This document shows positions 4,689 to 31,812 of a stretch of DNA of 64,000 nt, in pieces. Positions within the stretch are counted from its first letter, which is position 1. Each line of letters opens with the position of its first letter. The stretch comes from Asterias rubens. Lineage: Eukaryota. The stretch spans positions 8,494,001 to 8,558,000 of the forward strand of contig NC_047069.1 of the NCBI RefSeq assembly GCF_902459465.1, written 5' to 3'. A program made the position numbers and the translations under genes. The notes beneath the pieces are model-generated. The model was not told the DNA's origin. It saw only the letters and a program-made list of their open reading frames with translations, and did not search any database.

Positions 4689-7600
4689 CTTATTCTCCAC
4701 ACCATGCAAGCTTCAAACTGAAAAATTCTTCAATATACAAAAAATATCCTTTATAATCACCGAAGTAACGGGAAACAGTCAGGGTCACGGCAAATGTGAA
4801 GGGTTCATCAAAAAGGAGTTTTATTCATGTCACACTTTGCGAAGGTTTTTATTTAAAATGTGCATACAGTTTAACACATTTGATAACTCTTCATTTAGAA
4901 AAAACATCCTCCTTCATTTTAAGTTTTTTCGTTGAAACATTTCCCACCAAACGGAGCGGTTTACTGCGCGCGCTAATGAACACTCGCATTTTCTTGTGAA
5001 TTCTGAAAGGGTTCGAGGAGCGCTTTTCTGATCACGATATTGCAAAGAAACTCTTTATCTCGACTGCTATGTATACGTTCAATACGCTACGGATACGTTA
5101 TCATCTCGTTATCACAACGTTGGCTGTACGTTTCCCCTTTAGCAGACGTACACCAACGTATACCAACCTACGAGTAACGTTCATATAACGTATGTCAGCG
5201 TATGTCGACGTATGTCAACATATGCCTATCGTACCATAACATTACGGGGAACTTATGCAGAACGTATGAAGCATACGTTCAGTACGCCGATAAATTTTGA
5301 ACATGCTCAAAAATATTTGCGGGCTCGACGTGTTCAAAATTTTAACAGCGTATCCCAGCGTGCTCTTAACGTAAACGACGTATCCCCAACTTACCCCAAA
5401 CTTATATCAGCGTACACCAGCGTATTTTCGATATTTCGCATACGTTGGCTTACGTTCAGGCGATACGCCATGGTGTGACAGGGCCATCACTAATCCTCAT
5501 TTCTTCATGGTCGGTCGTGCTGAACGCACCAACCCATCAATACGTTACTCATACGCTTGCATACGCTGCGTTATGCTGTCATAACTTTGTTATTTAGTTA
5601 CGTGAAACGCTATCAATGCGTTAGTCACACGCTATGTATACGTTCAATACGCTATGGATACGCTATGGATACGTCCTTTCCAACACCGATGTCGACATTT
5701 TCGATGCAATTCGTTGGGAAGTTGGACGTTCTTGGACCTTGAAAACTGTTGTAACTATTTTGTGCATACGTTGGCATACGTTCAGGCGATACGCCATGGT
5801 ATGACAGGGCCTTTAGATAAGACTCCTACTCTGCAAAAGGGGGTTTCCACAATCGCTTTATGTCGAATGAAATTTGTTATTTTGCATGGGTTGGGGAATG
5901 ATAAACAACATGAGTCATAGTTCAAATCAATGATATTCCCTCTCCCTTCGACAGTTAAAAAGGCTGGGTTGCGAAACACTGCTCCATTTTCTTTTCTTTG
6001 TTTTCTTTTCTTTTTTTTGTTTTTTGTTTGGGGTGGGGGGGAGGGGGAGTTATCTGAGGCAATGATACTAAACAACACTTAAATACGAAACCTACACACG
6101 AAAACAAACACAAAGGTTTGCTTTTACATAGCACCAGCATTCTCTTTTGTTTCAAAAGGTGGTGTTAATCCATGCCCAACAAACTATTAGTGCACGAAAA
6201 TAAACGAATATCCAGATCCCGTTTATAGGATAACTGATAAAAACCGAATTAACAACAGTTCATTAAAATAACTATTTCTATCCATTTGCAAAATTGATTC
6301 AAACAATTGATATTATTCAATTATTTGTTTTGCCAAAATATAAACATCTAAACAGTTTTAGAGTAATTTATTATATTTTTCATTATATTATTATAATTTT
6401 GTAGGGTATTGTATCATTGTGATGTTGAGAAGGAGACAAATTGTGCGAACCTGAAGCTCTCAATGATCAGATATATTTTGTGGGTCAAGGTTATTCTCGT
6501 GCAACTTGCTTGGAACTGTTATAAATACAATCAACCCAGCAAAATACTTCTTGCAGTCAGCAATGTCTATAATTATCATAGAGCGAGGTTGGGGAACAAA
6601 CAGTGAATTTATTGCGATAGATGTCTCTGAGCAGGTTCTACAAATGTTAAAGTTGTCAATGCTTATGTCGGCACGCCTAAAGTGTATATCGGCGCCACGC
6701 TGATGAGTTTTTATTGGAACATATGCAGCTTCAAGCAACGGATATTTCCCTGGTCGGATGTACCAAGATGTCCTTCCTGTTAGCAACATTTCTTAAGGTG
6801 TTTTATATTGCTCATAAATCCTTTATCGGAAATGTTGTTTGTATCTCTACGGTGGATTGGTTTGTAATTTTCAAACAGCGTGCTAGGGTCTTTGAAGGAC
6901 AATAAATTACAAAACCATGATACTATTTTTATTTCAGCTTTAAAACCTTTGTGTGGGTCCCAATCTCACGAGGCACTGTCTTTTCAAAATTATCGCGGCT
7001 TAAGATACAATACGAAAGAGTAGGCGGGTGGTTCTCGAAAATAAAGTGTGCAATATACGCTTATATGAAGAGCTATAAACAAACAAGCGTTTTTCATGCG
7101 CTTTCCAGCAGCCATGGGCAGCGCTTTATTGTCAATTCTCTAGAGGACCTCGTCCATTATTTCTGTTCATCGTTTTTCCTCACATCCGTCTACAAATAAG
7201 ACCTAGTTATTCGACGTGCATGCAGGTGTGTCCCAATTAAACCACTCTTCGTTTGTCTCGACTCTTGAAAACGCAGGCATTTTGAAGCCAACCTTATGAA
7301 ACATTTCACTGACGAGCTTTTTTAATATAACTCTCAAGGTCTTAAAGCTTACTTTAGTGCAATTAGAGACGTTATGTAAGATACAACTTCTATTCTTAGT
7401 ATAACTATTTCTTTTAAATAGCTGGCCTCATCCTGAAATCAATCACTTTGCTCATTATAGTTTCGGTAAACTATCACAAACACACAACATATTTTTTTGA
7501 CAGGCTATATTAGCCTGCTTTTATCGTAAAAATAAATTCAGAGTGCATTCCGTTATCAAAATAGTTCTGAAGTTGTATCCATCCTAATGGGTCCATTTAA

Positions 7601-17972: not shown

Positions 17973-19172
17973 CTACATTCTAGATTCTTGAGTCCTTGAT
18001 GATATGCCACATTGGACAGTTACTGTACTTCCACGTACTGAGTTCTCTATCCTTTGTCTTTGGCTAGGCCGGCATTGTGCCGGAAAAAATGAAATTCTGA
18101 AAGACTCTCTGTACGTGCTACTCAACGCAGTATATATCACGGGGTTAACGATCGCATTGAAATAGGAAGTTACTCTGGCCACAGCAACCAGATATATTCT
18201 CACCTCTTGGGGTAATAAGAACTGGTCGCCCCGGAGCATTCCGACAAGATGAAATAAGGACATGATCTCGAAAGGCGCCAAAAGTGCAAATAAAGCAACC
18301 CCATTAATAACCAACATCCGGGCTATTTGGTTACGTGTGGAGGAGTCTCTTGTGTGAATGCGATGATTTGAATGATGACTGCGGTTCATGGACTTGTCAA
18401 GACCTCTTATTATTTGATGGTAAAAAATTGCATTTGTTACGAGGGAACAGAAAAATGGAATCGTTTGTACACCGTATGAGTACCTTTCGGACCATTCGTA
18501 CATAGGGTAGAACAGATATCTTACCCTGGGCCACTCGTTGTAGGGGTACCTGTCCGGCCAAATTATGCATTCGATATAGACTTTGGAAAAACTCATCAAT
18601 AGGGATGCAGATATAAGACTGGATACCAGAGTTGAAATAACAACGAGTGTGAAGACTGTAAGTTTTGTATCCCTTTTACGGTGTGGCCTGCAAACGCCAT
18701 TATAACGCTCCCATGACACCAACGTGATGAAACACAATGTTGCAAAGTATGACATGTTAATGATGAACTGGGTGAGGAGGCACCCAGACAGTCCGAGAGG
18801 GGTGTCATCAGTGTAGATTGGCGAGTAAATGTAGCACCATATTTTGCTCCCTATGGCGAAAACCAGGAACAGTATATCAGCAATAGCGAGCCCAACGAGA
18901 TAACAATTAGTAACGGTCCTCATTCGAGGTACTCGTGCCACAACGTAAATGAAAGCAGAGTTGTTCAGCACTCCAATGGCCATGACGATAGGGAGGATCA
19001 CTGTCACGAAAGCCACCTGCCCATCACTGTATGAGTTTTCCACGATGTCCTCCGGTGAAGTGAAATTGGAAGACATTAAACAACCTACGTCGGAATACTC
19101 TGATGGCTCAGTCCAGAACCAGTCTTGGTGATAGGTAGCATTTGAAAACACCTTCTCCTGTAATGAAGACAT
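17973..19172 (-). CDS. Class A (rhodopsin-type) GPCR, peptide-receptor-like (TRH/ghrelin-motilin receptor-like), intronless CDS, 399 aa
   Basis: Seven hydrophobic segments; TM1-2 MRTVTNCYLVGLAIAD; TM3 Cys and ERY; TM7 NAIVNPVIY; N-glycosylation sequons NAT and NFT in the N-terminus. The first ATG is at 19172 in a GCCATG context; the ORF-track start at 19235 is a GTG. Confidence 0.93.
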   Translation of the reverse strand: MSSLQEKVFSNATYHQDWFWTEPSEYSDVGCLMSSNFTSPEDIVENSYSDGQVAFVTVILPIVMAIGVLNNSAFIYVVARVPRMRTVTNCYLVGLAIADILFLVFAIGSKIWCYIYSPIYTDDTPLGLSGCLLTQFIINMSYFATLCFITLVSWERYNGVCRPHRKRDTKLTVFTLVVISTLVSSLISASLLMSFSKVYIECIIWPDRYPYNEWPRVRYLFYPMYEWSERYSYGVQTIPFFCSLVTNAIFYHQIIRGLDKSMNRSHHSNHRIHTRDSSTRNQIARMLVINGVALFALLAPFEIMSLFHLVGMLRGDQFLLPQEVRIYLVAVARVTSYFNAIVNPVIYTALSSTYRESFRISFFPAQCRPSQRQRIENSVRGSTVTVQCGISSRTQESRM

Positions 19173-20295
19173 GGCGACTAGGCGAGTGATGGTTCGCACA
19201 AGTTTCAGTCGTACCACACTTTTGTATATTTTCACCTCGGCTACAACTCCAACTGTTTTCTTGAGATCGGTTCAAATCAACTGTCTCAGTTGGCGTATTA
19301 AAAATTCGAATTCTGCAACGATAGCAACATAATGTTTCTCCACACACTGAGTAAATAAATATTTTTCAATTGATATAATGTTGTAGTTGTTCAGCATGGT
19401 TTAACAATTTGATAACCACAAGTTGTATTTCTGTAACGTACATAACCAAGCCTCCAAAGGCCATCTGGCTTAGTGGCTAGTTCAGGAAAGCTGATCTCCA
19501 ATTGTCAAGTCAGTTCTGAGTGACGCCACCCATAAACCGTTGTAAAAACTACTTGCCGTATTCACTCTGTCTCACTCAACCACAAACCTGTTTCGTCAGA
19601 CGGTCCACCGATCGTTTCTTCGTCCAGAATCCGACTGAACCGAAATGACAAACAGACGACTAATGGAGCATTGGATAGCTCGTCAAGGAATACGCGTGCG
19701 CACAATTGTAATCAGTTTGTACGACGTTGCCGGTGATGCGGAGACTTGCATCAAATTAAAATAGTGCATTAAAATGTAATTAATATAATAACAGTGGATA
19801 AACTTAATGGCTTTGTGAAGTCACGAAATTATTTTATGATATCCAATAAGGAAAAACAAGCATCGTGATAGTATTTTCGAAAAGGCAGGTTGATGTACAT
19901 GGTGTTTTATTTTTTGATTTATGCTACTCGTGATACTCGGAAGTCTCTGGATTTACTAATCAGGTAGTATCGGACTTAATTAGTCTGGATAAAGTATATT
20001 CATATTTATGACGCCTCCAGCTCGTACAGAAACCACCATATCAAGTGTCCTTGTTGTTGTTGTTGAAATGGTCATCTGCAAAGTTGATGAATGTCTTCAC
20101 ATTTTTTGTTTTTTCGTCTAAATGTTTTTGTAAGTAATGTCGATTTGGACAACTACTTCAACCCCATGATTTGTGACACGTAGTGCGGGATTAAGCAATT
20201 TATCGATATGTAAACTGCTCACAAAAAAGTTACGAAACTTTTTTGAATCAAGTATATCCTTAATATTTATTACTCGTTTCGTATATGTTATTTTA

Positions 20296-21147: not shown

Positions 21148-21646
21148 ATAGATAGAGTATATTCATTGTGTGTCAAAGGATTGTTATTTTTATGATGGAA
21201 GAGTTATTTTATGGTCAAAGGAAAAACGTTTATCGGGTAGTCTTTTTTGCCTGTTTAAGGGCAATTTACCTTAAGAAGAATTTGGCGATAGCAGTCATTG
21301 AATCAAGCATTATTTTTTAATACGAGTCGCCAATAGAAAATTTCATGACTTGTGGAAGAGCTCAATGTGCAAGACGTCTTGGTGCAAGACGTTTTTGTTC
21401 ATTGTCTCTCCACTGTTGCGATTCCCCGCTCCGAACCGCGCACACGATAGCGGGCGCTGTTTTGAAAATTTTCAGATCACCACTAAAAAAATCATCACCG
21501 CACACAAAATAACTCATCAAAACTTTTTGCACAAAGAATATTATGTACTCCTGCTTATAGTTCTCAGTCATCATCAAATATCTTGCAGATACACCGTGTC
21601 GGATCCCCATCATCAAAATAGTTGTTTCTTACGGGTTGCATGATAA

Positions 21647-22002
21647 GTCACACTTAGAAACACACGGAGAAAAGCAATACAGACAAGAGATTGTTTTGCG
21701 AGTAGTTAACTGTATCTTTATTTGCGACTTCATTCATGCATTTAATTCAAGGGTATATTATAACATCAACAGAACTGTTAGAGTTTGCGAAAATAATTAG
21801 CAAGTTTGCTGTATTGGCGAAATGTCACACTTAGAAACACACGGAGAAAAGCAATACAGACAAGAGATTGTTTTGCGAGTAGTTAACTGTATCTTTATTT
21901 GCGACTTCATTCATGCATTTAATTCAAGGGTATATTATAACATCAACAGAACTGTTAGAGTTTGCGAAAATAATTAGCAAGTTTGCTGTATTGGCGAAAT
22001 GT
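21647..22002. repeat. Tandem duplication, 2 x 177 bp, apparently identical
   Basis: GTCACACTTAGAAACACACGG...GTATTGGCGAAAT starts at both 21647 and 21824. Confidence 0.92.
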
Positions 22003-22558
22003 TGTGCTTTTTTGCGGAACTAAAAGTATAGTAGTTCAGAAGACCAATAAAGTATAAATCGAAATTCTTTTAAAAAGAAACACCAAACTGATATTTGTGG
22101 TTCATGCCGCTTTCATTTTAGTATTGTCACTGGCAAATTCGTTTTGATGAGCTTTCAAAAGAAACGCCCTACTCTTATGCTTTTGAAACACGTCACGCAT
22201 AAGCCTTACATGTGAGTTAAAATCACTAAGTCTTTTAAATGTGACAATTCCGTAAGGTTTATGTTGTTCAAATATAACACTTATAGCTATTTGCTCTTTA
22301 AGAATACTTAAAATTCAAACCAGTTTGTGCCTTGCAAAGTTAAAACAACACATAACCCCCCAAAATACGGTTAGCTCCAATAAAGTCATGTGGTATAGTG
22401 TTATTGACGCTCAATTTTTAGCGTTTTGTCCAGCAAGTAAACAATAATGACATTTATAACTTTTATCGTCAGATACGAAAAGGTCAAATGGAAATCAATT
22501 TTAAGAATTAATTATTGTTTGGAGGAAGAATCGAGACGAGTTATCGGTGCATTCCATT

Positions 22559-24165
22559 CTAACCAACTGCTGAAAATATCTCACACACAGCGTTACTGCC
22601 GTCTTTGGGGGTGACATTATACACACAGTCAACTGCATTGAAGTTGCTTTCGCATCCCTCTGTCCAAGTAAGTGGAGTCATGTAACTAAAAGGGACATAA
22701 CACAATTTTACTTATAATATTTTCCGTTACAGACTAGACCAATGTATTCTTGGTGGGTGGCTTATAGGCTTATTTGTATTGAAAAACGCAACATTTGTGT
22801 CACCGGTCGTTGTGTTGTTGCCGCGAGATCTATAAAACGTCACACGTTTAATTGTTATTAAAAAACCGTCTGGCCAAAACTAAGTTGATTTCCGGAAGTG
22901 TGTTTAAAACATGTTTAAAACAACTACAACCACTGAAGCAAAATGGACCAACAAAGAAACTGATGAGAACTTAAAATCTTGAATTATGATGATAAAGGTA
23001 CAAGAGAAATTCGAGTCGGAAAACATTCCATATACCAAAAAATTATGTGCTATGCCATGATTTTCGGTGCGGCAGGAGATTCTGTTCTTCCGGAGATTTG
23101 GTCTCCTATATGGCAAACTGTGTACAAATTTCTTCTTACGCCCTCTCATGAATCATCCTCCTCCAGCCCATGTTAATTTCCCGGATGGGGAACCAAATCT
23201 CCGGCGGACAGAATTCCCTGTCATACCAGCAGTTGTGTCGGTTTTGAAGACGAAATTTAAAGTACATTGAAAACAAAATAATTTTGATAACAACAATATC
23301 TGAACTTTATCGAAATGGCCGAATGTAAAAGTTGAAGTGTACAATTGGCGTGAAAGTATAAGATGTTTTTTATTTGATTATTGTTCGAAAATTATTGTGG
23401 CATGTAAAGGGGGAAATCCAAAAACACTTACCTGGTGCAGCAAGACTTCACTTGTCCATCAGCAGAACAAGAACAGCTGTTGCAACCTTCCGTGAACTGC
23501 GTGCCTGCCTCACAGGTTGTAGCTTTGAAATTAGAACAATAAATATTTTATCAACAAGACGAAGTCTGCATTTTAACACACACGATGAGCTATTAACTAT
23601 TCAAACTCTTAATCGTGTGACCTTCGTCAATGAGTCGTGATATGCACTGATGGACACTTCGGTAATCACTGTTAGCATACAAACTTTATTGTTAACGATC
23701 AATGGAGAGCTGTTGATCTTTTAAACATAGTGAGAACGGCTCCCTCTGAAGTAACGTAGTTTTCGAGAAAGAAGTTATTTTCTACTAACATAATTTGATT
23801 TCGAGACCTCAGAATTTGATTTTGAGGTCTCGAGATAAATCATCTGACAGCACACAAGTTTGTGTGACAATGTTTTTGTTTGTGTCTTCCATTATTATCT
23901 CGCAACTTCGACGACCAATTGAGTTCAAATTTTCGCAGATTAGTTATTGTATGCAATGTTGAGATACACTAAGTGAAAAGACTGGTATTTGACAATTACC
24001 GAAGGTGTCCATTTTGTCTTTAAAATATTGCTTGAAATTAAATGCAACGTTTCAAATACTGACATTGTGCTTTGATGACTTACCCTCATTTTGACACGAT
24101 GCTTCAGTATCTGCGACCAGCGCCAAAAAGCCAACAAGGGCAACAAGGAGGAATAGCTTGGCCAT
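22559..24165 (-). CDS. Beta-microseminoprotein (PSP94/MSMB family)-like secreted protein, 99 aa, 3 exons
   Basis: Exons 24165-24084, 23522-23432 and 22685-22559 join with GT-AG sites in phases 1 and 2 to give MAKLFLLVALVGFLALVADTEA-SCQNEATTCEAGTQFTEGCNSCSCSADGQVKSCCTSYMTPLTWTEGCESNFNAVDCVYNVTPKDGSNAVCEIFSAVG*. It has a signal peptide and 10 Cys in PSP94 order (SC...C...CxxCxC...CC...TP...C...F...CxYxV...C). A TATATAAAG box lies upstream. Confidence 0.85.
23073..23220. mobile_element. Small hairpin MITE (CAGG...CCTG) in intron 2 of the microseminoprotein-like gene
   Basis: CAGGAGATTCTGTTCTTCCGGAGATTTGGTCTCC vs the reverse complement of GGAACCAAATCTCCGGCGGACAGAATTCCCTG. Confidence 0.55.
23642..24023. 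mobile_element. TTAA-type MITE, family A, in intron 1 of the microseminoprotein-like gene
   Basis: Internal GAGAACGGCTCCCTCTGAAGTAACGTAGTTTTCGAGAAAGAAG. Right end GGTGTCCATTTTGTCT|TTAA; left end degenerate. Confidence 0.75.
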
Positions 24166-24255
24166 TTTTCGGAACGAGTGAAGAATTCTTTTTGAAAGTG
24201 AAGTGCGCTAACTTTTCCTGCCGTGAGAATGATATAACTCTGAGCTCGCAAGGAC

Positions 24256-24264
24256 TTTATATAG
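24256..24264 (-). promoter_or_regulatory. TATA box of the microseminoprotein-like gene
   Basis: Minus strand TATATAAAG, ~90 bp upstream of the ATG, with a TCATTC Inr-like motif ~25-30 bp downstream. Confidence 0.55.
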
Positions 24265-25792
24265 AAGATCAATTGTAAATCGAACCCGTTCACGTGGAGA
24301 GAGATTGCAATTAAGATTTTGTAAAGGAACTAAGCGTGACCAATTAATGACACATGTGTATCAAATGATCCAGCCAAACAGATGTCGATGTGTATCAAAA
24401 TTTCGGTCTATATTACAATCTTACCATCATCATTAAAAGGGGAGTTCGATTTTTACAATAATTACCTTCGTTACAACGCCATGTTCTCTTATTCTGACGA
24501 ACGATAATGTCGGCTCTTGCTATATTTAAAATTGTGACAAATTGTGACAAATTCGTTGACTTATTTCAATTAGGAAAAATACAACTCTAAGACTTTAGAA
24601 CTTTTCTCTTCTTCTTTTCGCCCTTTTTAATATAACAATTAATTAGGTTAGGAGGTTTATTGGTTCACGGTGTAGATTTCTTCTGACTTACATTCAGTAT
24701 TTCCACTAATTGAAGATTATTTTGCATAAACCTGAGATGGAACCCATGAGTAATTCATTGGAATATTTTTTTATTATTTTTTTACTTTATGACGCGCTCG
24801 TATTTGGTTTAATCATTGATACTGTCTTCCCTGCACGACACCTGTCCTCGTACATATTACTTTTCGTGTTTTTATTGTAAATCAAATTAAGTACTGTAAT
24901 ACTGTCTTGGTTCGTAAGGTATATTGTTTTTCTTCTGAACTTTTATTGAAAATCCGAGGCCATGTTATTAATTTAAAGATGATTGTTACAGAAAGATACG
25001 ATCATGTTTCTCTACTTTTTTTTTTCTTTTTTTTTGACAAATCAATGTCGACTTACAATCCTTATAATTTAATGTGGCAAAACTGCAAGGCTGAACAAAA
25101 GTTTATGAACTCAATCTATACTCTCTCTCTCTATCTGTGCTATCACGAAATATTAGGATATAAAATGCATGAAATTCTCCATGTACACACAATCATTTAT
25201 GCAAGCACTCACTCAGTCGACCCAATTTGTCGCGTTGCCGCATGTTTGAGTCGGGCTAACACACCCATATACAATATATTATGTTTGTTGATTGGTTTTC
25301 AAAATGTTTGTTATATAATATTAATCCTTGGAAGTTTCAGACTGACATAATGACTAAATTGTCTTATTTAAGCCAGTTAAACTGTAAGCATCTTGTGTTC
25401 GTCCATTTTGTTCATCTTGGATAAAGCAACAAAATTCTGCTATTGCTTCATCAATAACCAAACTTTTCAAACTGTTTATACACCTATGACACATTGCATA
25501 ATTTGCGTTCTTCCCCGTTTTGTATTTGTGTGTGTCAGTGTTTTTGTGTATGTGTTTCGATATCTACCGCTAGACGCTTGTTTATAAATATAGTACAGTT
25601 ACTTTATTATTAAATGAATATTAATTACATGTCAATGATGAACCAACATATGTGTGTATCTCGAAGTGATAAGCCTTTCTTTTTTGAAAGCGTAAACCAC
25701 CATATACGACCGTTTCACTCTGCGAACATCTCAAGGCTGATGAGTTGCCATGTACGTGTTTCAATCTTAGAGCTTTTCAACCCATGTGGGAT

Positions 25793-28700: not shown

Positions 28701-29858
28701 TTCTTTGTAGCTTTTATACTATACCATAAAGTAGTTGTGCAGCTCTAATGTCATCCTCCTGCAGCTTCAGGCCTGGCATGTAACCGGTATAGTCTGGTGC
28801 CATTATAGCGCCCTCTGTCCATGAGTGCTGCAAGCCAAGACTGTGACCAAGTTCGTGGAGAGCAACCTGAAACAAGTTGTAGCCTGTGACAGTGAAATGA
28901 ATTATGTTTCTTTTAGGTGTGAGCTAGAAACGAAACCAAATATATTGCAACCTGTTGAACTAACAACACAAAAATAATGAAAACAGTAAAACACGTCATA
29001 ATCAACGGGGAAGCGAAACCAAAGACATAGCCAAAATTATTCTATTCTAGGAAACTATTCAAGTTAATAATTTTCTAAGAAGATTGAACTTTGTAACTTG
29101 CCATCATGTCCCCGGTATGTGAAGACCTCAGAATCATCAAAATGTACGTCTCCGTCTAAATCACCGTGCAAGCCGTTCGGCACGAATGCATGGGCTATGG
29201 TCCCGTTGATACCATCAAAGTCGTAAGGGCAGTTGTGGTTCCATGTTGAGAACTTGATGTGAATATCTGCGTGCCCATTGGTTATTCTCCGAAATGACAA
29301 GGGGGTAGCCTCTTCCCATTGTTTAAAGGCTCTACCTAGTGAATCGTCCACTTGGTCCTCAGTCATCCGGTAGTGGTATGGATAATTCACAATTCTGCGT
29401 GAATGTATGGAGTTGTTTTTGTTGATTGCTTATTATAGTCTTTACTTTACTACTTAGACATATAGAGATGTTTTTAATTTTGTGTTTAGAAATTTAAATC
29501 TATATTGAATACAGCATTATAAACATAACCGAGTCTTCAAAGTAGCATTACTTTTAATTCCATAAACCCACCTGTACGTCAAATGTTTCTTGGTCCATCT
29601 CGTCCAGTCGATGGAGTACCGCTTCTGTCTTCTGTCACCAGGTCTCATTGAAGATATACCTCCCAGATCCGGCACACCGCATCGAGGTTTTCTTGCTCCA
29701 GAACGGGTGGCATTTACTTCTTGGGATAATTTCGGCACCAATGCAAACTTCCCACGCGAAGTCTTTTCGGAGCCATGAGAGCTGGCTGCAGATTTCCTTT
29801 GATCTAAGCCCGTGACGTCTTGAAGAGATGGTACTTTTCCAAGAGTGATTACATCACT
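25793..29858 (-). CDS. Secreted matrix metalloproteinase (M10A) with propeptide, catalytic and hemopexin domains; 5' end unresolved
   Basis: Exons 29858-29572, 29394-29102, 28883-28725, 27757-27657, 27450-27303, 26958-26816, 26130-26016 and 25902-25793 join in consistent phase. Motifs: cysteine switch PRCGVPD, furin site RQKR, AHAF, zinc site HELGHSLGLQH, Met-turn AIMAP, and hemopexin repeats ending FMGC*. No TM or GPI tail. Confidence 0.95.
26221..26722 (+). mobile_element. tRNA-derived SINE interrupted by a MITE, in an MMP intron
   Basis: Head GGGTGTCGTGGCCGAGTGG; CORE-like GTGTCCCTGAGCAAGACACTTAAC; CACCCAGGACTAAATGGGTACC; tail AAGCGCTTTGAG...GGTGTGAAAA...(ATT)n. Confidence 0.7.
26324..26476. 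mobile_element. 153-bp palindromic MITE with 3-bp TSD (ATA), PIF/Harbinger (Tourist)-like
   Basis: ATA|GGGTGCGTTCGTTTAGCTTCCCTGGGTCGACCCCGGTGTGTGGCGG...CCGCCACACACCGGGGTCGACCCGGGGAAGCTCAACGAACGCACCC|ATA. Confidence 0.85.
28267..28642. mobile_element. TTAA-type MITE, family A, in an MMP intron
   Basis: TTAA|AGGCAGTGGTCACTATTGGTAATTACTC ... CAATAGTGTCCAGTGTTTCT|TTAA. Confidence 0.85.
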
Positions 29859-31037: not shown

Positions 31038-31812
31038 TTATATACACTGGACACATATCGAAATTACTCCAAATATTTGTTAAAGACAGTGTACACTATT
31101 GGTAATTGTCAAAGACCAGTCTTCTCACTTGGTGTATCTCAACATATGCATAAAATAACAAACCTGTGAAAATTTGAGCTCGATCGGTCCTCGGAGTTGC
31201 AAGATAACTATGAAAGAAAAAAACACCCTTGTCACACGAAGATGTGTGCGTTTAGATGGTTGATTTCGAGACCTCAAGTTCTAAACTTGAGGTCTCGAAA
31301 TCAAATTCGTGGAAAATTACTCCTTTCTCCAAAACTAGGTCACTTCAGAGAGAGCTGTTTCTCACAATGTTTTATACAATCAACCTCTCCCCATTACTCG
31401 TTACAAAGTAAGGTTTTATGCCAATAATTATTTTGAGTAATTACCAATAGTGTCCACTGACTTTAACATAAAAACCTACTTGTTAAAGACCAATGGAGCT
31501 GTAGTGTTGATAGTATAAAACATTGCGAGAAATGGCTCCCTCTGAAGTGACGTAGTCTTCGAGGAAGAAGTAATTTTCCACTGAAATATTTGAATTTGAC
31601 TTCGAGACCTCATAGATAGATTTTGAGGTCTCGAAATCAAGCATCTGAAAGCACACAACTTGTGCGACAAGTGTGATACTTCTTCCATTATTCTCTCGCA
31701 ACTTCGACGACCAATTGAATTTTTATTATTTTTTGGCATACAAAATATGTTGAGATACACCAAGTGAGAACTCTGGTCTTTGACAATTAATCAAAGTGTC
31801 CAGTGCCTTTAA
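31038..31812. mobile_element. Outer family A MITE split by a nested copy
   Basis: Left end 31038-31083 (CACTGGACAC..AATTACTCCAAATATTTGTTAA). The element resumes at 31467 (CATAAAAACCTACTTG) and ends GTGTCCAGTGCCT|TTAA at 31812. Confidence 0.75.
31080..31466. mobile_element. Inner family A MITE, opposite orientation, with TTAA TSD
   Basis: TTAA|AGACAGTGTACACTATTGGTAATTGTC ... AATTACCAATAGTGTCCACTGACT|TTAA. Confidence 0.88.

What the first reader, a model, noticed from the sequence alone, without database searches (positions are those of the whole stretch)
22559..24264. Hidden 3-exon gene for a compact 10-Cys beta-microseminoprotein-like secreted peptide
No ORF-track entry shows this protein. 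A TATA box, a clean signal peptide, phase-matched GT-AG introns and 10 cysteines in PSP94/MSMB order together give a 99-aa precursor. The first two inter-cysteine loops (C-X6-C and C-X9-C) are much shorter than in human MSMB (about 15 and 18 residues), suggesting a miniaturised N-terminal domain. Exon 2 alone resembles a pacifastin/VWC-like motif. Vertebrate PSP94 proteins bind CRISPs and have candidacidal activity; an echinoderm role is an open question (inference).
Basis: partly seen in the sequence, partly recalled or inferred. Interest (0 to 1): 0.72.

Follow-up and report, generated by a model that had tools for sequence, protein, structure and literature searches.

The report
Compact starfish beta-microseminoprotein gene
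This is a real, spliced and transcribed three-exon starfish gene, already in RefSeq as an uncharacterised protein, that encodes a small secreted 10-cysteine protein of the known beta-microseminoprotein (MSMB/PSP94) family; its front half is unusually short and reads like an insect pacifastin protease-inhibitor module.

Summary
Transcript contigs from three public runs join 24084|23522 and 23432|22685 on the minus strand at GT..AG. The 99-aa product is identical to RefSeq XP_033631324.1, "uncharacterized protein LOC117293209" of Asterias rubens. So the gene is unnamed, not hidden. Its 96%-identical A. amurensis orthologue is already labelled "beta-microseminoprotein-like".

- **MSMB membership is well supported.** Pfam PSP94 falls just short (20.0 bits against a cut-off of 22). 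A vertebrate-only MSMB profile matches 75 of 77 mature residues (hhalign probability 98.6%, E 6.6e-15). It scores 51 bits, against at most 23.5 bits for 500 cysteine-preserving shuffles. The C-terminal cysteine spacing is identical. The AlphaFold model (pLDDT 92) and the ESM Atlas model are both nearest to MSMB structures.
- **The N-terminal loops really are short.** They are C-x6-C and C-x9-C, against 12-18 and 16-18 in most vertebrate sequences compared.
- **The N-domain looks like pacifastin.** The short second loop makes it score as pacifastin-like. Vertebrate MSMBs and a canonical A. rubens paralogue do not.
- **The pacifastin reactive-site loop is absent.**

Echinoderm PSP94-like genes are already published, so this is a new, divergent member of a known family. 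Its function is inferred only, as a secreted binding or defence protein.

The parts
24255..24263 (-). TATA box (TATATAAAG)
   Evidence: Read directly. It lies about 28 nt upstream of the furthest 5' end of a transcript contig (24235). Promoter function is inferred.
24084..24235 (-). Exon 1: 5'UTR (24235..24166) plus CDS 24165..24084. It encodes the signal peptide, then Ser-Cys-Gln-Asn-Glu and the first base of codon 28.
   Evidence: Translation. Contig 5' ends lie at 24207, 24211 and 24235, and the joint at 24084 is.
23523..24083 (-). Intron 1 (561 nt, GT..AG, phase 1). It carries a dispersed repeat of about 280 bp at 23715-24005.
   Evidence: Joint 23522|24084 'skips 561, CT..AC' in runs X1, X2 and X12.
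23432..23522 (-). Exon 2 (91 nt). It encodes the compact N-terminal domain core with six Cys (C31, C41, C44, C46, C55, C56) and is pacifastin-like.
   Evidence: Translation. Pfam Pacifastin_I 24.9 bits, E 1.7e-5, for this exon alone. PDB pacifastin inhibitors at E 5.6e-4.
22686..23431 (-). Intron 2 (746 nt, GT..AG, phase 2)
   Evidence: Joint 22685|23432 'skips 746, CT..AC' in runs X2, X3 and X12.
22559..22685 (-). Exon 3 coding part. It encodes the linker plus the MSMB C-terminal domain (C69, C78, C92), one N-x-T sequon at N81, and ends ...CEIFSAVG then TAG.
   Evidence: Translation. The spacing after CC is 12, 8, 13 with a 7-residue tail, identical to vertebrate MSMBs.
21894..22558 (-). 3'UTR, running to an AATAAA at 21899..21894
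   Evidence: Contigs cover 22300-22558 and run a further 329 nt (X12) and 393 nt (X3) beyond 22300. AATAAA was read. The exact poly(A) site is inferred.

Best explanation
An expressed three-exon gene of Asterias rubens (RefSeq LOC117293209) encodes a 99-aa precursor. It consists of a 22-residue signal peptide and a 77-residue mature protein that is acidic (about 8.1 kDa, pI about 4.1) and has 10 cysteines. The protein is a divergent member of the beta-microseminoprotein (MSMB/PSP94) family.

Structure. It has a four-stranded N-terminal sheet and a small C-terminal beta domain. By homology these would be held by five disulfides: C24-C56, C31-C46, C44-C55, C41-C78 (interdomain) and C69-C92. This pairing is inferred by mapping cysteine order onto chicken MSMB3 and was not measured.

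What is unusual. The beta-hairpin between the 2nd and 3rd cysteines is cut to 9 residues, against 15 in the A. rubens paralogue and 16-18 in most vertebrates. This leaves an N-domain whose sequence and predicted backbone closely match the 'conventional' pacifastin module. The pacifastin reactive-site loop is replaced by the MSMB interdomain linker.

Likely mode of action (inferred from family knowledge, not shown here). It is a secreted, protease-resistant extracellular binding protein. It would act by edge-strand or surface contacts with a partner such as a CAP/CRISP-type protein, or in mucosal or body-fluid defence. It is unlikely to be a canonical serine-protease inhibitor.
For: The gene is real:
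- Spliced contigs with both exact junctions occur in three runs, including a sister species.
- The product is identical to the RefSeq protein.
- The gene is single-copy in its own genome.

Family membership:
- An exhaustive phmmer search finds Pfam-verified vertebrate MSMBs (50-90 bits to PF05825) aligned over residues 21-99, at E 8e-6 to 7e-4 in 1.8 billion proteins.
- hhalign against a vertebrate-only MSMB profile gives probability 98.6%, E 6.6e-15, over 75 of 77 columns.
- A vertebrate-only HMM gives 51.1 bits. Five hundred cysteine-preserving shuffles give a mean of 5.4 and a maximum of 23.5.
- The spacing after the CC pair (12, 8, 13, tail 7) and the ...C-E-x-x-x-x-V-G end are the same as in vertebrate MSMBs.

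Fold:
- The AlphaFold2 model has pLDDT 92.4.
- The top Foldseek PDB hits are human PSP94 3IX0 (TM 0.76), 2IZ3, chicken MSMB3 6RWC and snake SSP-2 6IMF_B.
- The Foldseek-independent search is topped by 6RWC (Z 6.7) and 6IMF_B (Z 5.3).
- AFDB clusters are topped by beta-microseminoproteins.
- The ESM Atlas's own alignment-free model matches an MSMB cluster at TM 0.79.

Other support:
- The canonical A. rubens paralogue has the same three-exon layout, the same intron phases (1, 2) and the same SC-x6-C start.
- The orthologue is named beta-microseminoprotein-like by NCBI.
Against: - Pfam PF05825 scores 20.0 bits, 2 bits under its gathering cut-off.
- The six-frame PF05825 scan of the genome did not list this locus at all.
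- The N-domain scores higher against pacifastin than any other MSMB tested.
- The AlphaFold model was built from an MSMB alignment, so it is not fully independent. The ESM Atlas model partly offsets this.
- No function, partner, tissue or disulfide map was tested.
Confidence: 0.9

Rival explanations
1. It is functionally a pacifastin-type serine-protease inhibitor. On this reading a conventional pacifastin-like domain carries an MSMB-like C-terminal extension and blocks a protease through a canonical binding loop.
For: - Exon 2 alone gives Pacifastin_I 24.9 bits, E 1.7e-5.
- Locust SGPI/PMP inhibitors hit at E 5.6e-4 with about 45% identity.
- hhalign against a pacifastin-domain profile gives probability 94.4%, E 1.7e-8.
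- It scores 30.3 bits on my pacifastin HMM. Other MSMBs score 8-14 and cysteine-kept shuffles at most 19.
- Pacifastin inhibitor structures superpose on 27-28 residues at 0.9-1.4 A.
- The motif C-x9-C-N-x-C-x-C-x3-G is present. It includes the Cys2-Asn and Gly features listed in PMC13388995.
Against: - The score is below the Pfam gathering cut-off (27.9).
- The defining Cys5-x-P1-P1'-x-Cys6 reactive loop is absent. After C55-C56-T57 the next Cys comes 12 residues later, inside the MSMB C-domain, and an intron splits the site.
- The would-be P1 residue is Ser.
- My pacifastin HMM was built from proteins retrieved with this very query, which biases it in the query's favour.
- The whole-protein matches are to MSMB.
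Confidence: 0.06
2. It is a generic single-VWC-type (SVWC/VWC/CirpT-like) secreted cysteine-rich protein, and its likeness to MSMB reflects only the shared superfold.
For: - CirpT1 (Z 4.2) and vWC domains of CCN3 and collagen IIA (Z 3.0-3.1) follow the MSMB hits.
- SVWC and VWC clusters appear in the ESM Atlas structure list at TM 0.4-0.5.
- The MSMB-CirpT-VWC fold relation is published (PMC6955305).
Against: - There is no Pfam VWC or SVWC hit for this protein.
- MSMB-specific features are all present: the C-terminal domain spacing and the conserved terminal V-G. Profile scores lie far above cysteine-kept shuffles.
- MSMB hits outrank VWC hits in every search.
Confidence: 0.03
3. It is a non-functional or chance reading frame in a transcribed non-coding locus.
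For: None beyond the short length of the exons.
Against: - Both introns have exact GT..AG splicing in phase.
- All ten Cys and the reading frame are conserved in the sister species (95/99 identical).
- The family and fold matches are significant.
Confidence: 0.01

Closest known systems
Vertebrate beta-microseminoprotein / PSP94 (Pfam PF05825; structures 3IX0, 2IZ3, 6RWC) and snake small serum protein SSP-2 (6IMF_B)
   Same: - A secreted protein of about 8-10 kDa with ten Cys in the same order.
- The CxxCxC...CC motif and the conserved Pro in the linker.
- Identical spacing in the C-terminal domain (12-13, 8, 13, tail 7) and the ...V-G C-terminus.
- A two-domain all-beta fold.
- About 30-40% identity.
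   Different: - The first loop is 6 residues, against 12-18 here and 9 in chicken MSMB3 (PMC8167871).
- The second loop is 9 residues against 16-18, so the small inserted hairpin is largely gone.
- The CxC-to-CC loop is 8 residues against 6-7.
- The mature chain is 77 aa against about 86-94.
- It scores 2 bits below the Pfam cut-off.
- It carries an N-x-T sequon, whereas MSMBs are described as non-glycosylated (PMC8167871).
Canonical A. rubens MSMB paralogue on G000:C7 (L016, about 5688-7484, minus strand)
   Same: - The same three-exon layout with intron phases 1 and 2 at equivalent positions.
- Cys distributed 1 + 6 + 3 over the exons.
- A mature start S-C-x6-C.
- A 'CE[AP]G' start of exon 2.
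   Different: - Only 22 identical residues in the pairwise alignment.
- The second loop is 15 residues, not 9.
- It scores 65 bits on the MSMB HMM and only 8 bits on the pacifastin HMM, against 51 and 30 for this gene.
- Its splice model is my own reading and has not been checked with reads.
Pacifastin-like domains (Pfam PF05375; SGPI-1/2, PMP-C; 'conventional' class of PMC13388995)
   Same: - The motif C-x9-C-N-x-C-x-C-x3-G-x4-C-(C)-T.
- About 43-48% identity over 27-28 residues at about 1 A rmsd.
- The MSMB disulfides C12-C35, C33-C42 and C30-C66 of chicken MSMB3 (PMC8167871) correspond by order to pacifastin Cys1-Cys4, Cys3-Cys5 and Cys2-Cys6 (PMC13388995). The mapping is my inference.
   Different: - There is no Cys5-x-P1-P1'-x-Cys6 reactive loop.
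- The partner of Cys2 sits in a separate C-terminal domain.
- There is an extra N-terminal strand and a CC pair.
- The score is below the Pfam cut-off.
- Echinoderms and chordates are not mentioned in the 2026 pacifastin survey (terms searched).
Echinoderm PSP94-like genes already published: an 11-gene tandem cluster in the sea cucumber Apostichopus japonicus induced in gut regeneration (PMC5638244), and a testis-enriched beta-microseminoprotein in crown-of-thorns starfish (PMC9759900)
   Same: Secreted MSMB/PSP94-like proteins in echinoderms.
   Different: This gene is single-copy and not in a tandem array. Its sequence was not compared with those genes because they were not retrievable with the tools used.

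Membership tests
Beta-microseminoprotein / PSP94 (PF05825) | Match to the curated Pfam model above its gathering score | tested here: inconclusive
   20.0 bits against a cut-off of 22, E 0.0011, profile positions 31-89 of 94. This is a detection threshold and not a biological feature. The six-frame genome scan missed the locus.
Beta-microseminoprotein / PSP94 (PF05825) | Significant full-length similarity to bona fide members, beyond the cysteine framework | tested here: met
   hhalign against a vertebrate-only profile gives probability 98.6%, E 6.6e-15, over 75 of 77 columns. The HMM gives 51.1 bits against at most 23.5 for 500 Cys-preserving shuffles. phmmer hits to Pfam-verified MSMBs are.
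Beta-microseminoprotein / PSP94 (PF05825) | Ten conserved cysteines in family order, with CxxCxC...CC and the C-terminal spacing | tested here: met
   Cys at 24, 31, 41, 44, 46, 55, 56, 69, 78 and 92. The spacing after CC is 12, 8, 13 with a 7-residue tail, the same as in 20 of the 21 vertebrate members compared. All ten Cys are said to be conserved in the family (PMC8167871).
Beta-microseminoprotein / PSP94 (PF05825) | Two-domain all-beta fold: an N-terminal Greek-key sheet plus a small C-terminal sheet | tested here: met
   The model has pLDDT 92.4 and 8 strands. The best PDB matches are 3IX0, 2IZ3, 6RWC and 6IMF_B. The alignment-free ESM Atlas model matches an MSMB cluster at TM 0.79. All of these are predictions, not solved structures.
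Beta-microseminoprotein / PSP94 (PF05825) | Five specific disulfides, including the interdomain bridge | not testable with these tools
The pairing is inferred by order from chicken MSMB3 (PMC8167871).
Beta-microseminoprotein / PSP94 (PF05825) | Secreted: a cleavable signal peptide, with the mature chain starting at or near the first Cys | tested here: inconclusive
   By inspection only. The sequence reads MAK, then a 15-residue hydrophobic core, then D-T-E-A|S-C, so the mature start is S-C. No signal-peptide predictor was available.
Beta-microseminoprotein / PSP94 (PF05825) | Binding of CAP/CRISP-type partners, or antifungal activity of the C-domain loop | not tested
   No complex prediction was run and no assay was possible. 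The human calcium-coordinating E71 (PMC3320615) aligns, by counting back from the conserved Cys, with V76 here and with D76 in A. amurensis. That is not informative.
Pacifastin (PF05375) | Match to the curated Pfam model above its gathering score | tested here: not met
   24.9 bits for exon 2 alone and 22.0 bits for the whole protein, against a cut-off of 27.9.
Pacifastin (PF05375) | Cys1-x(9-12)-Cys2-Asn-x-Cys3-x-Cys4 with a Gly in the Cys4-Cys5 loop | tested here: met
   The sequence reads C31-x9-C41-N42-S-C44-S-C46-SAD-G50-QVKS-C55. The features are as listed in PMC13388995.
Pacifastin (PF05375) | Six-Cys domain closed by the reactive loop Cys5-x-P1-P1'-x-Cys6 | tested here: not met
   After C55-C56-T57 the next Cys (C69) is 12 residues on, in the next exon and domain. 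The protein is therefore not filed as a pacifastin.
VWC / SVWC (PF00093, PF15430) | Pfam match or best structural match | tested here: not met
   No VWC or SVWC hit at E<=10. vWC structures reach only Z 3.0-3.1, below the MSMB hits.

The most novel reading that the evidence does not exclude
This Asterias protein may be a sequence-level bridge between two families treated as unrelated. It matches a vertebrate MSMB profile (probability 98.6%) and a pacifastin-domain profile (probability 94.4%). The two profiles barely see each other directly (probability 9.6%). The three N-domain and interdomain disulfides of MSMB map one-to-one onto pacifastin Cys1-4, 3-5 and 2-6.

If this is homology and not convergence after loop shortening, the MSMB N-domain is a pacifastin-like or VWC-subdomain-1 module whose sixth cysteine moved into an added C-terminal domain. 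The 'conventional' short-loop pacifastin architecture, described as arthropod-restricted (PMC13388995), would then also exist in a deuterostome. No paper in the searched library mentions both families.
Probability: 0.3. Interest if true: 0.55.

Novelty: new member of a known kind. Interest (0 to 1): 0.3.

Why it matters
The practical result is an annotation fix. LOC117293209 can be named beta-microseminoprotein-like, in line with its A. amurensis orthologue. It also shows why Pfam misses it: the loops are shortened. Beyond that it is the shortest MSMB I saw (77 mature residues), which makes it a handy minimal scaffold for structural work on the family. Its dual similarity is a concrete, testable lead on whether MSMB, pacifastin and VWC modules share an origin. 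It does not open a new kind of biology. MSMB-like genes are already known in echinoderms, and nothing about its function was shown here.

Tried and rejected
1. The six-frame PF05825 scan of the whole genome did not list this locus. Exon-by-exon scores are too weak. It did reveal a canonical paralogue on C7.
2. The single-sequence word-indexed protein search found only the protein itself. The exhaustive search was needed.
3. A protein search of the own genome found no paralogue close enough to detect. So there is no tandem array, unlike in the sea cucumber.
4. The alternative third exon (acceptor at 23219, 'CTREFC') is rejected. No joint to it appears in any of four runs. The depth at 23081-23222 comes from contigs that are not joined to the exons.
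5. Rfam found nothing in 21500-25000.
6. A literature search for the accession and locus name returned nothing. 'Pacifastin' plus 'microseminoprotein' also returned nothing.
7. MAFFT and hhalign place C24 opposite the vertebrate second Cys. I reject that register for three reasons: the structural alignments start at residue 1 of both proteins, both mature chains begin S-C, and the paralogue has the same exon distribution of Cys. Without coordinates this remains an inference.
8. The first call for sequencing runs failed because the machine was busy, and the repeat succeeded.
9. Complex prediction was not used, because I do not claim a specific partner.
10. Tissue of expression could not be read because run labels are coded, and contig depth cannot rank expression.
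Full report

Yes. On the minus strand an ATG at 24165 opens an 82-nt coding exon that ends at 24084 before GTAAGT. A 91-nt exon runs 23522..23432, with AG before it and GTAAGT after it. A third exon starts at 22685 after a pyrimidine tract and AG, and ends with TAG at 22561..22559.

- Joined, the exons give a 300-nt frame (phases 1 and 2) and a 99-aa protein.
- The cysteines are at 24, 31, 41, 44, 46, 55, 56, 69, 78 and 92.
- TATATAAAG sits at 24263..24255.

**2. Is it transcribed and spliced that way?**

Yes. Logan contigs of public runs were laid on 22300-24400.

- Joint 22685|23432 skips 746 nt and reads CT..AC on the + strand, which is GT..AG on the - strand. It appears in X2, X3 and X12.
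- Joint 23522|24084 skips 561 nt and also reads CT..AC. It appears in X1, X2 and X12. X3 shows the same junction with one substituted base.
- Single contigs (X12 record 9, 958 nt; X2 record 15, 805 nt) cover all three exons with no mismatch.
- The 5' ends lie at 24207-24235, about 28 nt below the TATA box.
- The contigs run 329-393 nt beyond 22300. That implies a 3'UTR of about 650 nt ending near an AATAAA at 21899..21894 (inferred).
- No joint uses the alternative acceptor at 23219.
- The runs are only guessed to be RNA. However, contigs that lack both introns cannot be genomic DNA of this locus.

**3. Is it 'hidden'?**

No. The 99-aa product is 100% identical to XP_033631324.1, "uncharacterized protein LOC117293209 [Asterias rubens]". 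Its 90% cluster also holds XP_071787227.1 of Asterias amurensis, which NCBI already names "beta-microseminoprotein-like". The two are 95/99 identical.

- The substitutions seen in run X3 (organism B) at 22576, 22632 and 23522 reproduce three of the four amino-acid differences of that orthologue: F95L, V76D and A28V.
- Organism B is therefore probably A. amurensis, and the splicing is conserved there (inference).
- All four coding differences are non-synonymous and I saw no synonymous one. That is too few to test, but it fits the fast evolution known for MSMBs.

**4. What family?**

Pfam alone is ambiguous. PSP94 (PF05825) gives 20.0 bits against a cut-off of 22. Pacifastin_I (PF05375) gives 22.0 bits for the whole protein and 24.9 bits for exon 2 alone, against a cut-off of 27.9. 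The six-frame PF05825 scan of the genome missed the locus. Stronger tests settle it.

- **Exhaustive search.** phmmer over 1.8 billion representatives finds two kinds of hit. The first kind is long multi-repeat arthropod pacifastin proteins that match only residues about 20-60, many times over. The second kind is proteins of 86-185 aa that match residues 21-99 or 38-99 once. Every one of the second kind that I checked is a bona fide vertebrate MSMB (50-90 bits to PF05825; named).
- **Profile comparison.** A profile of 21 vertebrate MSMBs, built without the starfish sequences, aligns to 75 of the 77 mature residues with hhalign probability 98.6% and E 6.6e-15.
- **Shuffle control.** As an HMM, that profile gives 51.1 bits. 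Five hundred shuffles that keep every cysteine in place give 5.4 ± 4.6 bits, with a maximum of 23.5.
- **Spacing.** The cysteine spacing of the C-terminal half (12, 8, 13, then a 7-residue tail ending V-G) is the same as in the vertebrate family.

**5. Fold**

AlphaFold2 with a 23-sequence MSMB alignment gives pLDDT 92.4 and eight strands.

- Foldseek against the PDB ranks human PSP94 3IX0 first (TM 0.76, probability 1.00). It is followed by 2IZ3, chicken MSMB3 6RWC and snake SSP-2 6IMF_B.
- The Foldseek-independent search ranks 6RWC (Z 6.7) and 6IMF_B (Z 5.3) first. The tick C5 inhibitor CirpT1 (Z 4.2) and vWC domains (Z 3.0-3.1) come next. These Z values are modest in absolute terms, but the MSMB hits stand above all unrelated rows.
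- AFDB clusters are topped by beta-microseminoproteins and the related PAMP/MSMP.
- The AlphaFold model leaned on an MSMB alignment, so I also looked at the ESM Atlas's own alignment-free model. It matches an MSMB cluster at TM 0.79.
- The MSMB-CirpT-VWC fold kinship is already published (PMC6955305).

**6. The 'miniaturised N-domain'**

This is confirmed, with one refinement.

| Protein | Loop 1 | Loop 2 |
|---|---|---|
| This gene (and its A. amurensis orthologue) | 6 | 9 |
| Most vertebrate MSMBs retrieved | 12-18 | 16-18 |
| Chicken MSMB3 (PMC8167871) | 9 | 17 |
| A. rubens paralogue on C7 | 6 | 15 |

- The genome holds a canonical MSMB paralogue on contig C7. Its C-terminal exon alone scores 43.6 bits to PF05825.
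- My splice reading of that paralogue has the same three exons, the same phases (1, 2) and the same 1 + 6 + 3 distribution of cysteines.
- So the short first loop is a starfish-lineage trait. Only the 9-residue second loop is special to this gene and its A. amurensis orthologue.
- In chicken MSMB3 that second loop forms a small two-stranded sheet inserted in the Greek key (PMC8167871). Here it is largely deleted.

**7. The pacifastin likeness**

With the loop cut to 9 residues, exon 2 reads C-E-A-G-T-x-F-x3-C-N-x-C-x-C-x2-D-G-x4-C.

- This is 43-48% identical to locust SGPI/PMP inhibitors. It superposes on them at 0.9-1.4 A over 27-28 residues.
- hhalign against a profile of 150 pacifastin domains gives probability 94.4% and E 1.7e-8.
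- The vertebrate MSMB profile against the same pacifastin profile gives only 9.6%.
- On my pacifastin HMM this protein scores 30.3 bits. The C7 paralogue scores 8.2, six vertebrate MSMBs score 9-14, and cysteine-kept shuffles reach at most 19.0.
- A caveat: that HMM was built from domains of proteins retrieved with this very query, so it is biased towards it. The independent Pfam model shows the same trend (about 25 bits here against about 15 bits for vertebrate MSMBs).
- A 2026 survey defines 'conventional' pacifastin domains by a Cys1-Cys2 loop of 9-12 residues and calls them arthropod-restricted. 'Ancestral' domains have 13-20 residues. The features it lists are the Cys2-Asn-x-Cys3 motif, a Gly in the Cys4-Cys5 loop, the Cys5-x-P1-P1'-x-Cys6 reactive loop and the pairing 1-4, 2-6, 3-5 (PMC13388995).
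- This protein has the first two sequence features but not the reactive loop. After C55-C56-T57 the next Cys is 12 residues away, in the C-terminal domain, and an intron interrupts the site. I therefore do not file it as a pacifastin and consider canonical protease inhibition unlikely.
- By cysteine order, the MSMB3 disulfides C12-C35, C33-C42 and C30-C66 (PMC8167871) correspond to pacifastin 1-4, 3-5 and 2-6. The mapping is my inference. It suggests, but does not prove, a common origin. No paper in the library mentions both families.

**8. How it most likely works**

Shown:
- It is a spliced transcript seen in several runs.
- It encodes a small 10-Cys protein with a signal-peptide-like N-terminus, an MSMB fold and one N-x-T sequon.
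- The mature chain is about 8.1 kDa with pI about 4.1.

Inferred from family knowledge:
- MSMBs are secretion and mucus proteins that bind CRISP3 and related CAP proteins, and some have antifungal or antibacterial activity (PMC8167871, PMC3320615).
- In echinoderms, PSP94-like genes are induced during sea-cucumber gut regeneration (PMC5638244). A beta-microseminoprotein is testis-enriched in crown-of-thorns starfish (PMC9759900).
- I therefore take this to be an extracellular binding or defence protein. Nothing here tests a partner, a tissue or an activity.

**9. Context**

- The gene is single-copy.
- It lies between a rhodopsin-type GPCR ORF (17973-19235, minus strand; 7tm_1 98 bits) and a matrixin exon (29064-29390, minus strand; 83 bits). 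I see no functional link to either.
- Intron 1 carries a dispersed repeat of about 280 bp with thousands of genomic copies. This repeat explains the huge contig depth at 23720-24003.

**10. Verdict**

- The gene is already modelled in RefSeq but unnamed, and its orthologue is already called MSMB-like. Echinoderm MSMB-like genes are published.
- It is a new, unusually compact member of a known family.
- The one lead that goes beyond routine annotation is its dual MSMB/pacifastin similarity.

Noticed in passing
window 23715-24005 (intron 1 of the gene): A dispersed repeat of about 280 bp. The first look found 7,436 candidate copies in the genome, and the 40 that were scored are about 85% identical over nearly the full length. 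An internal segment (query 81-125) also matches on the opposite strand, so the element holds an inverted repeat. It is massively represented in the transcriptome contigs. Similar translated strings appear near window 31476-31763 and in L001. There is no Rfam match. It is probably a MITE- or SINE-like element.
   Followed up: partly
G000:C7, L016 about 5688-7484 (minus strand): A canonical beta-microseminoprotein paralogue of A. rubens. Its C-terminal exon scores 43.6 bits to PF05825. My splice reading gives a 104-aa precursor with the same 3-exon layout and phases, SC-x6-C and a 15-residue second loop. The splice sites were not checked with reads.
   Followed up: partly
G000:C4 3.91-3.94 Mb and G000:C21 4.18-4.24 Mb (L004, L005, L008, L009, L011, L012): Clusters of weak PF05825 hits (15-22 bits) that cover only profile positions about 11-60, the CxxCxC...CC N-domain region. 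They may be tandem arrays of other cysteine-rich (VWC-, pacifastin- or MSMB-N-like) exons. I did not examine them.
   Followed up: no
window 17973-19235 (minus strand): An intronless 420-aa ORF for a rhodopsin-family GPCR (7tm_1 98 bits, E 8e-28; weak Srw chemoreceptor hit) about 3 kb downstream of the gene's 3' end.
   Followed up: partly
window 29064-29390 (minus strand): An exon-sized ORF encoding part of a matrixin (Peptidase_M10, 83 bits, E 2.8e-23). This suggests a matrix metalloproteinase gene upstream.
   Followed up: partly
window 22559-24165 compared with run X3 (organism B): All four coding differences from the sister-species transcript or orthologue are non-synonymous (A28V, M60I, V76D, F95L) and none is synonymous. 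The 259 nt of 3'UTR that were laid carry 4 substitutions and 1 indel. This is too few to test selection, but it fits rapid evolution with all Cys kept.
   Followed up: partly
window 23081-23222: Moderate contig depth inside intron 2 in all four runs, from contigs that are not joined to the exons. It is probably another repeat or an unrelated transcript.
   Followed up: no
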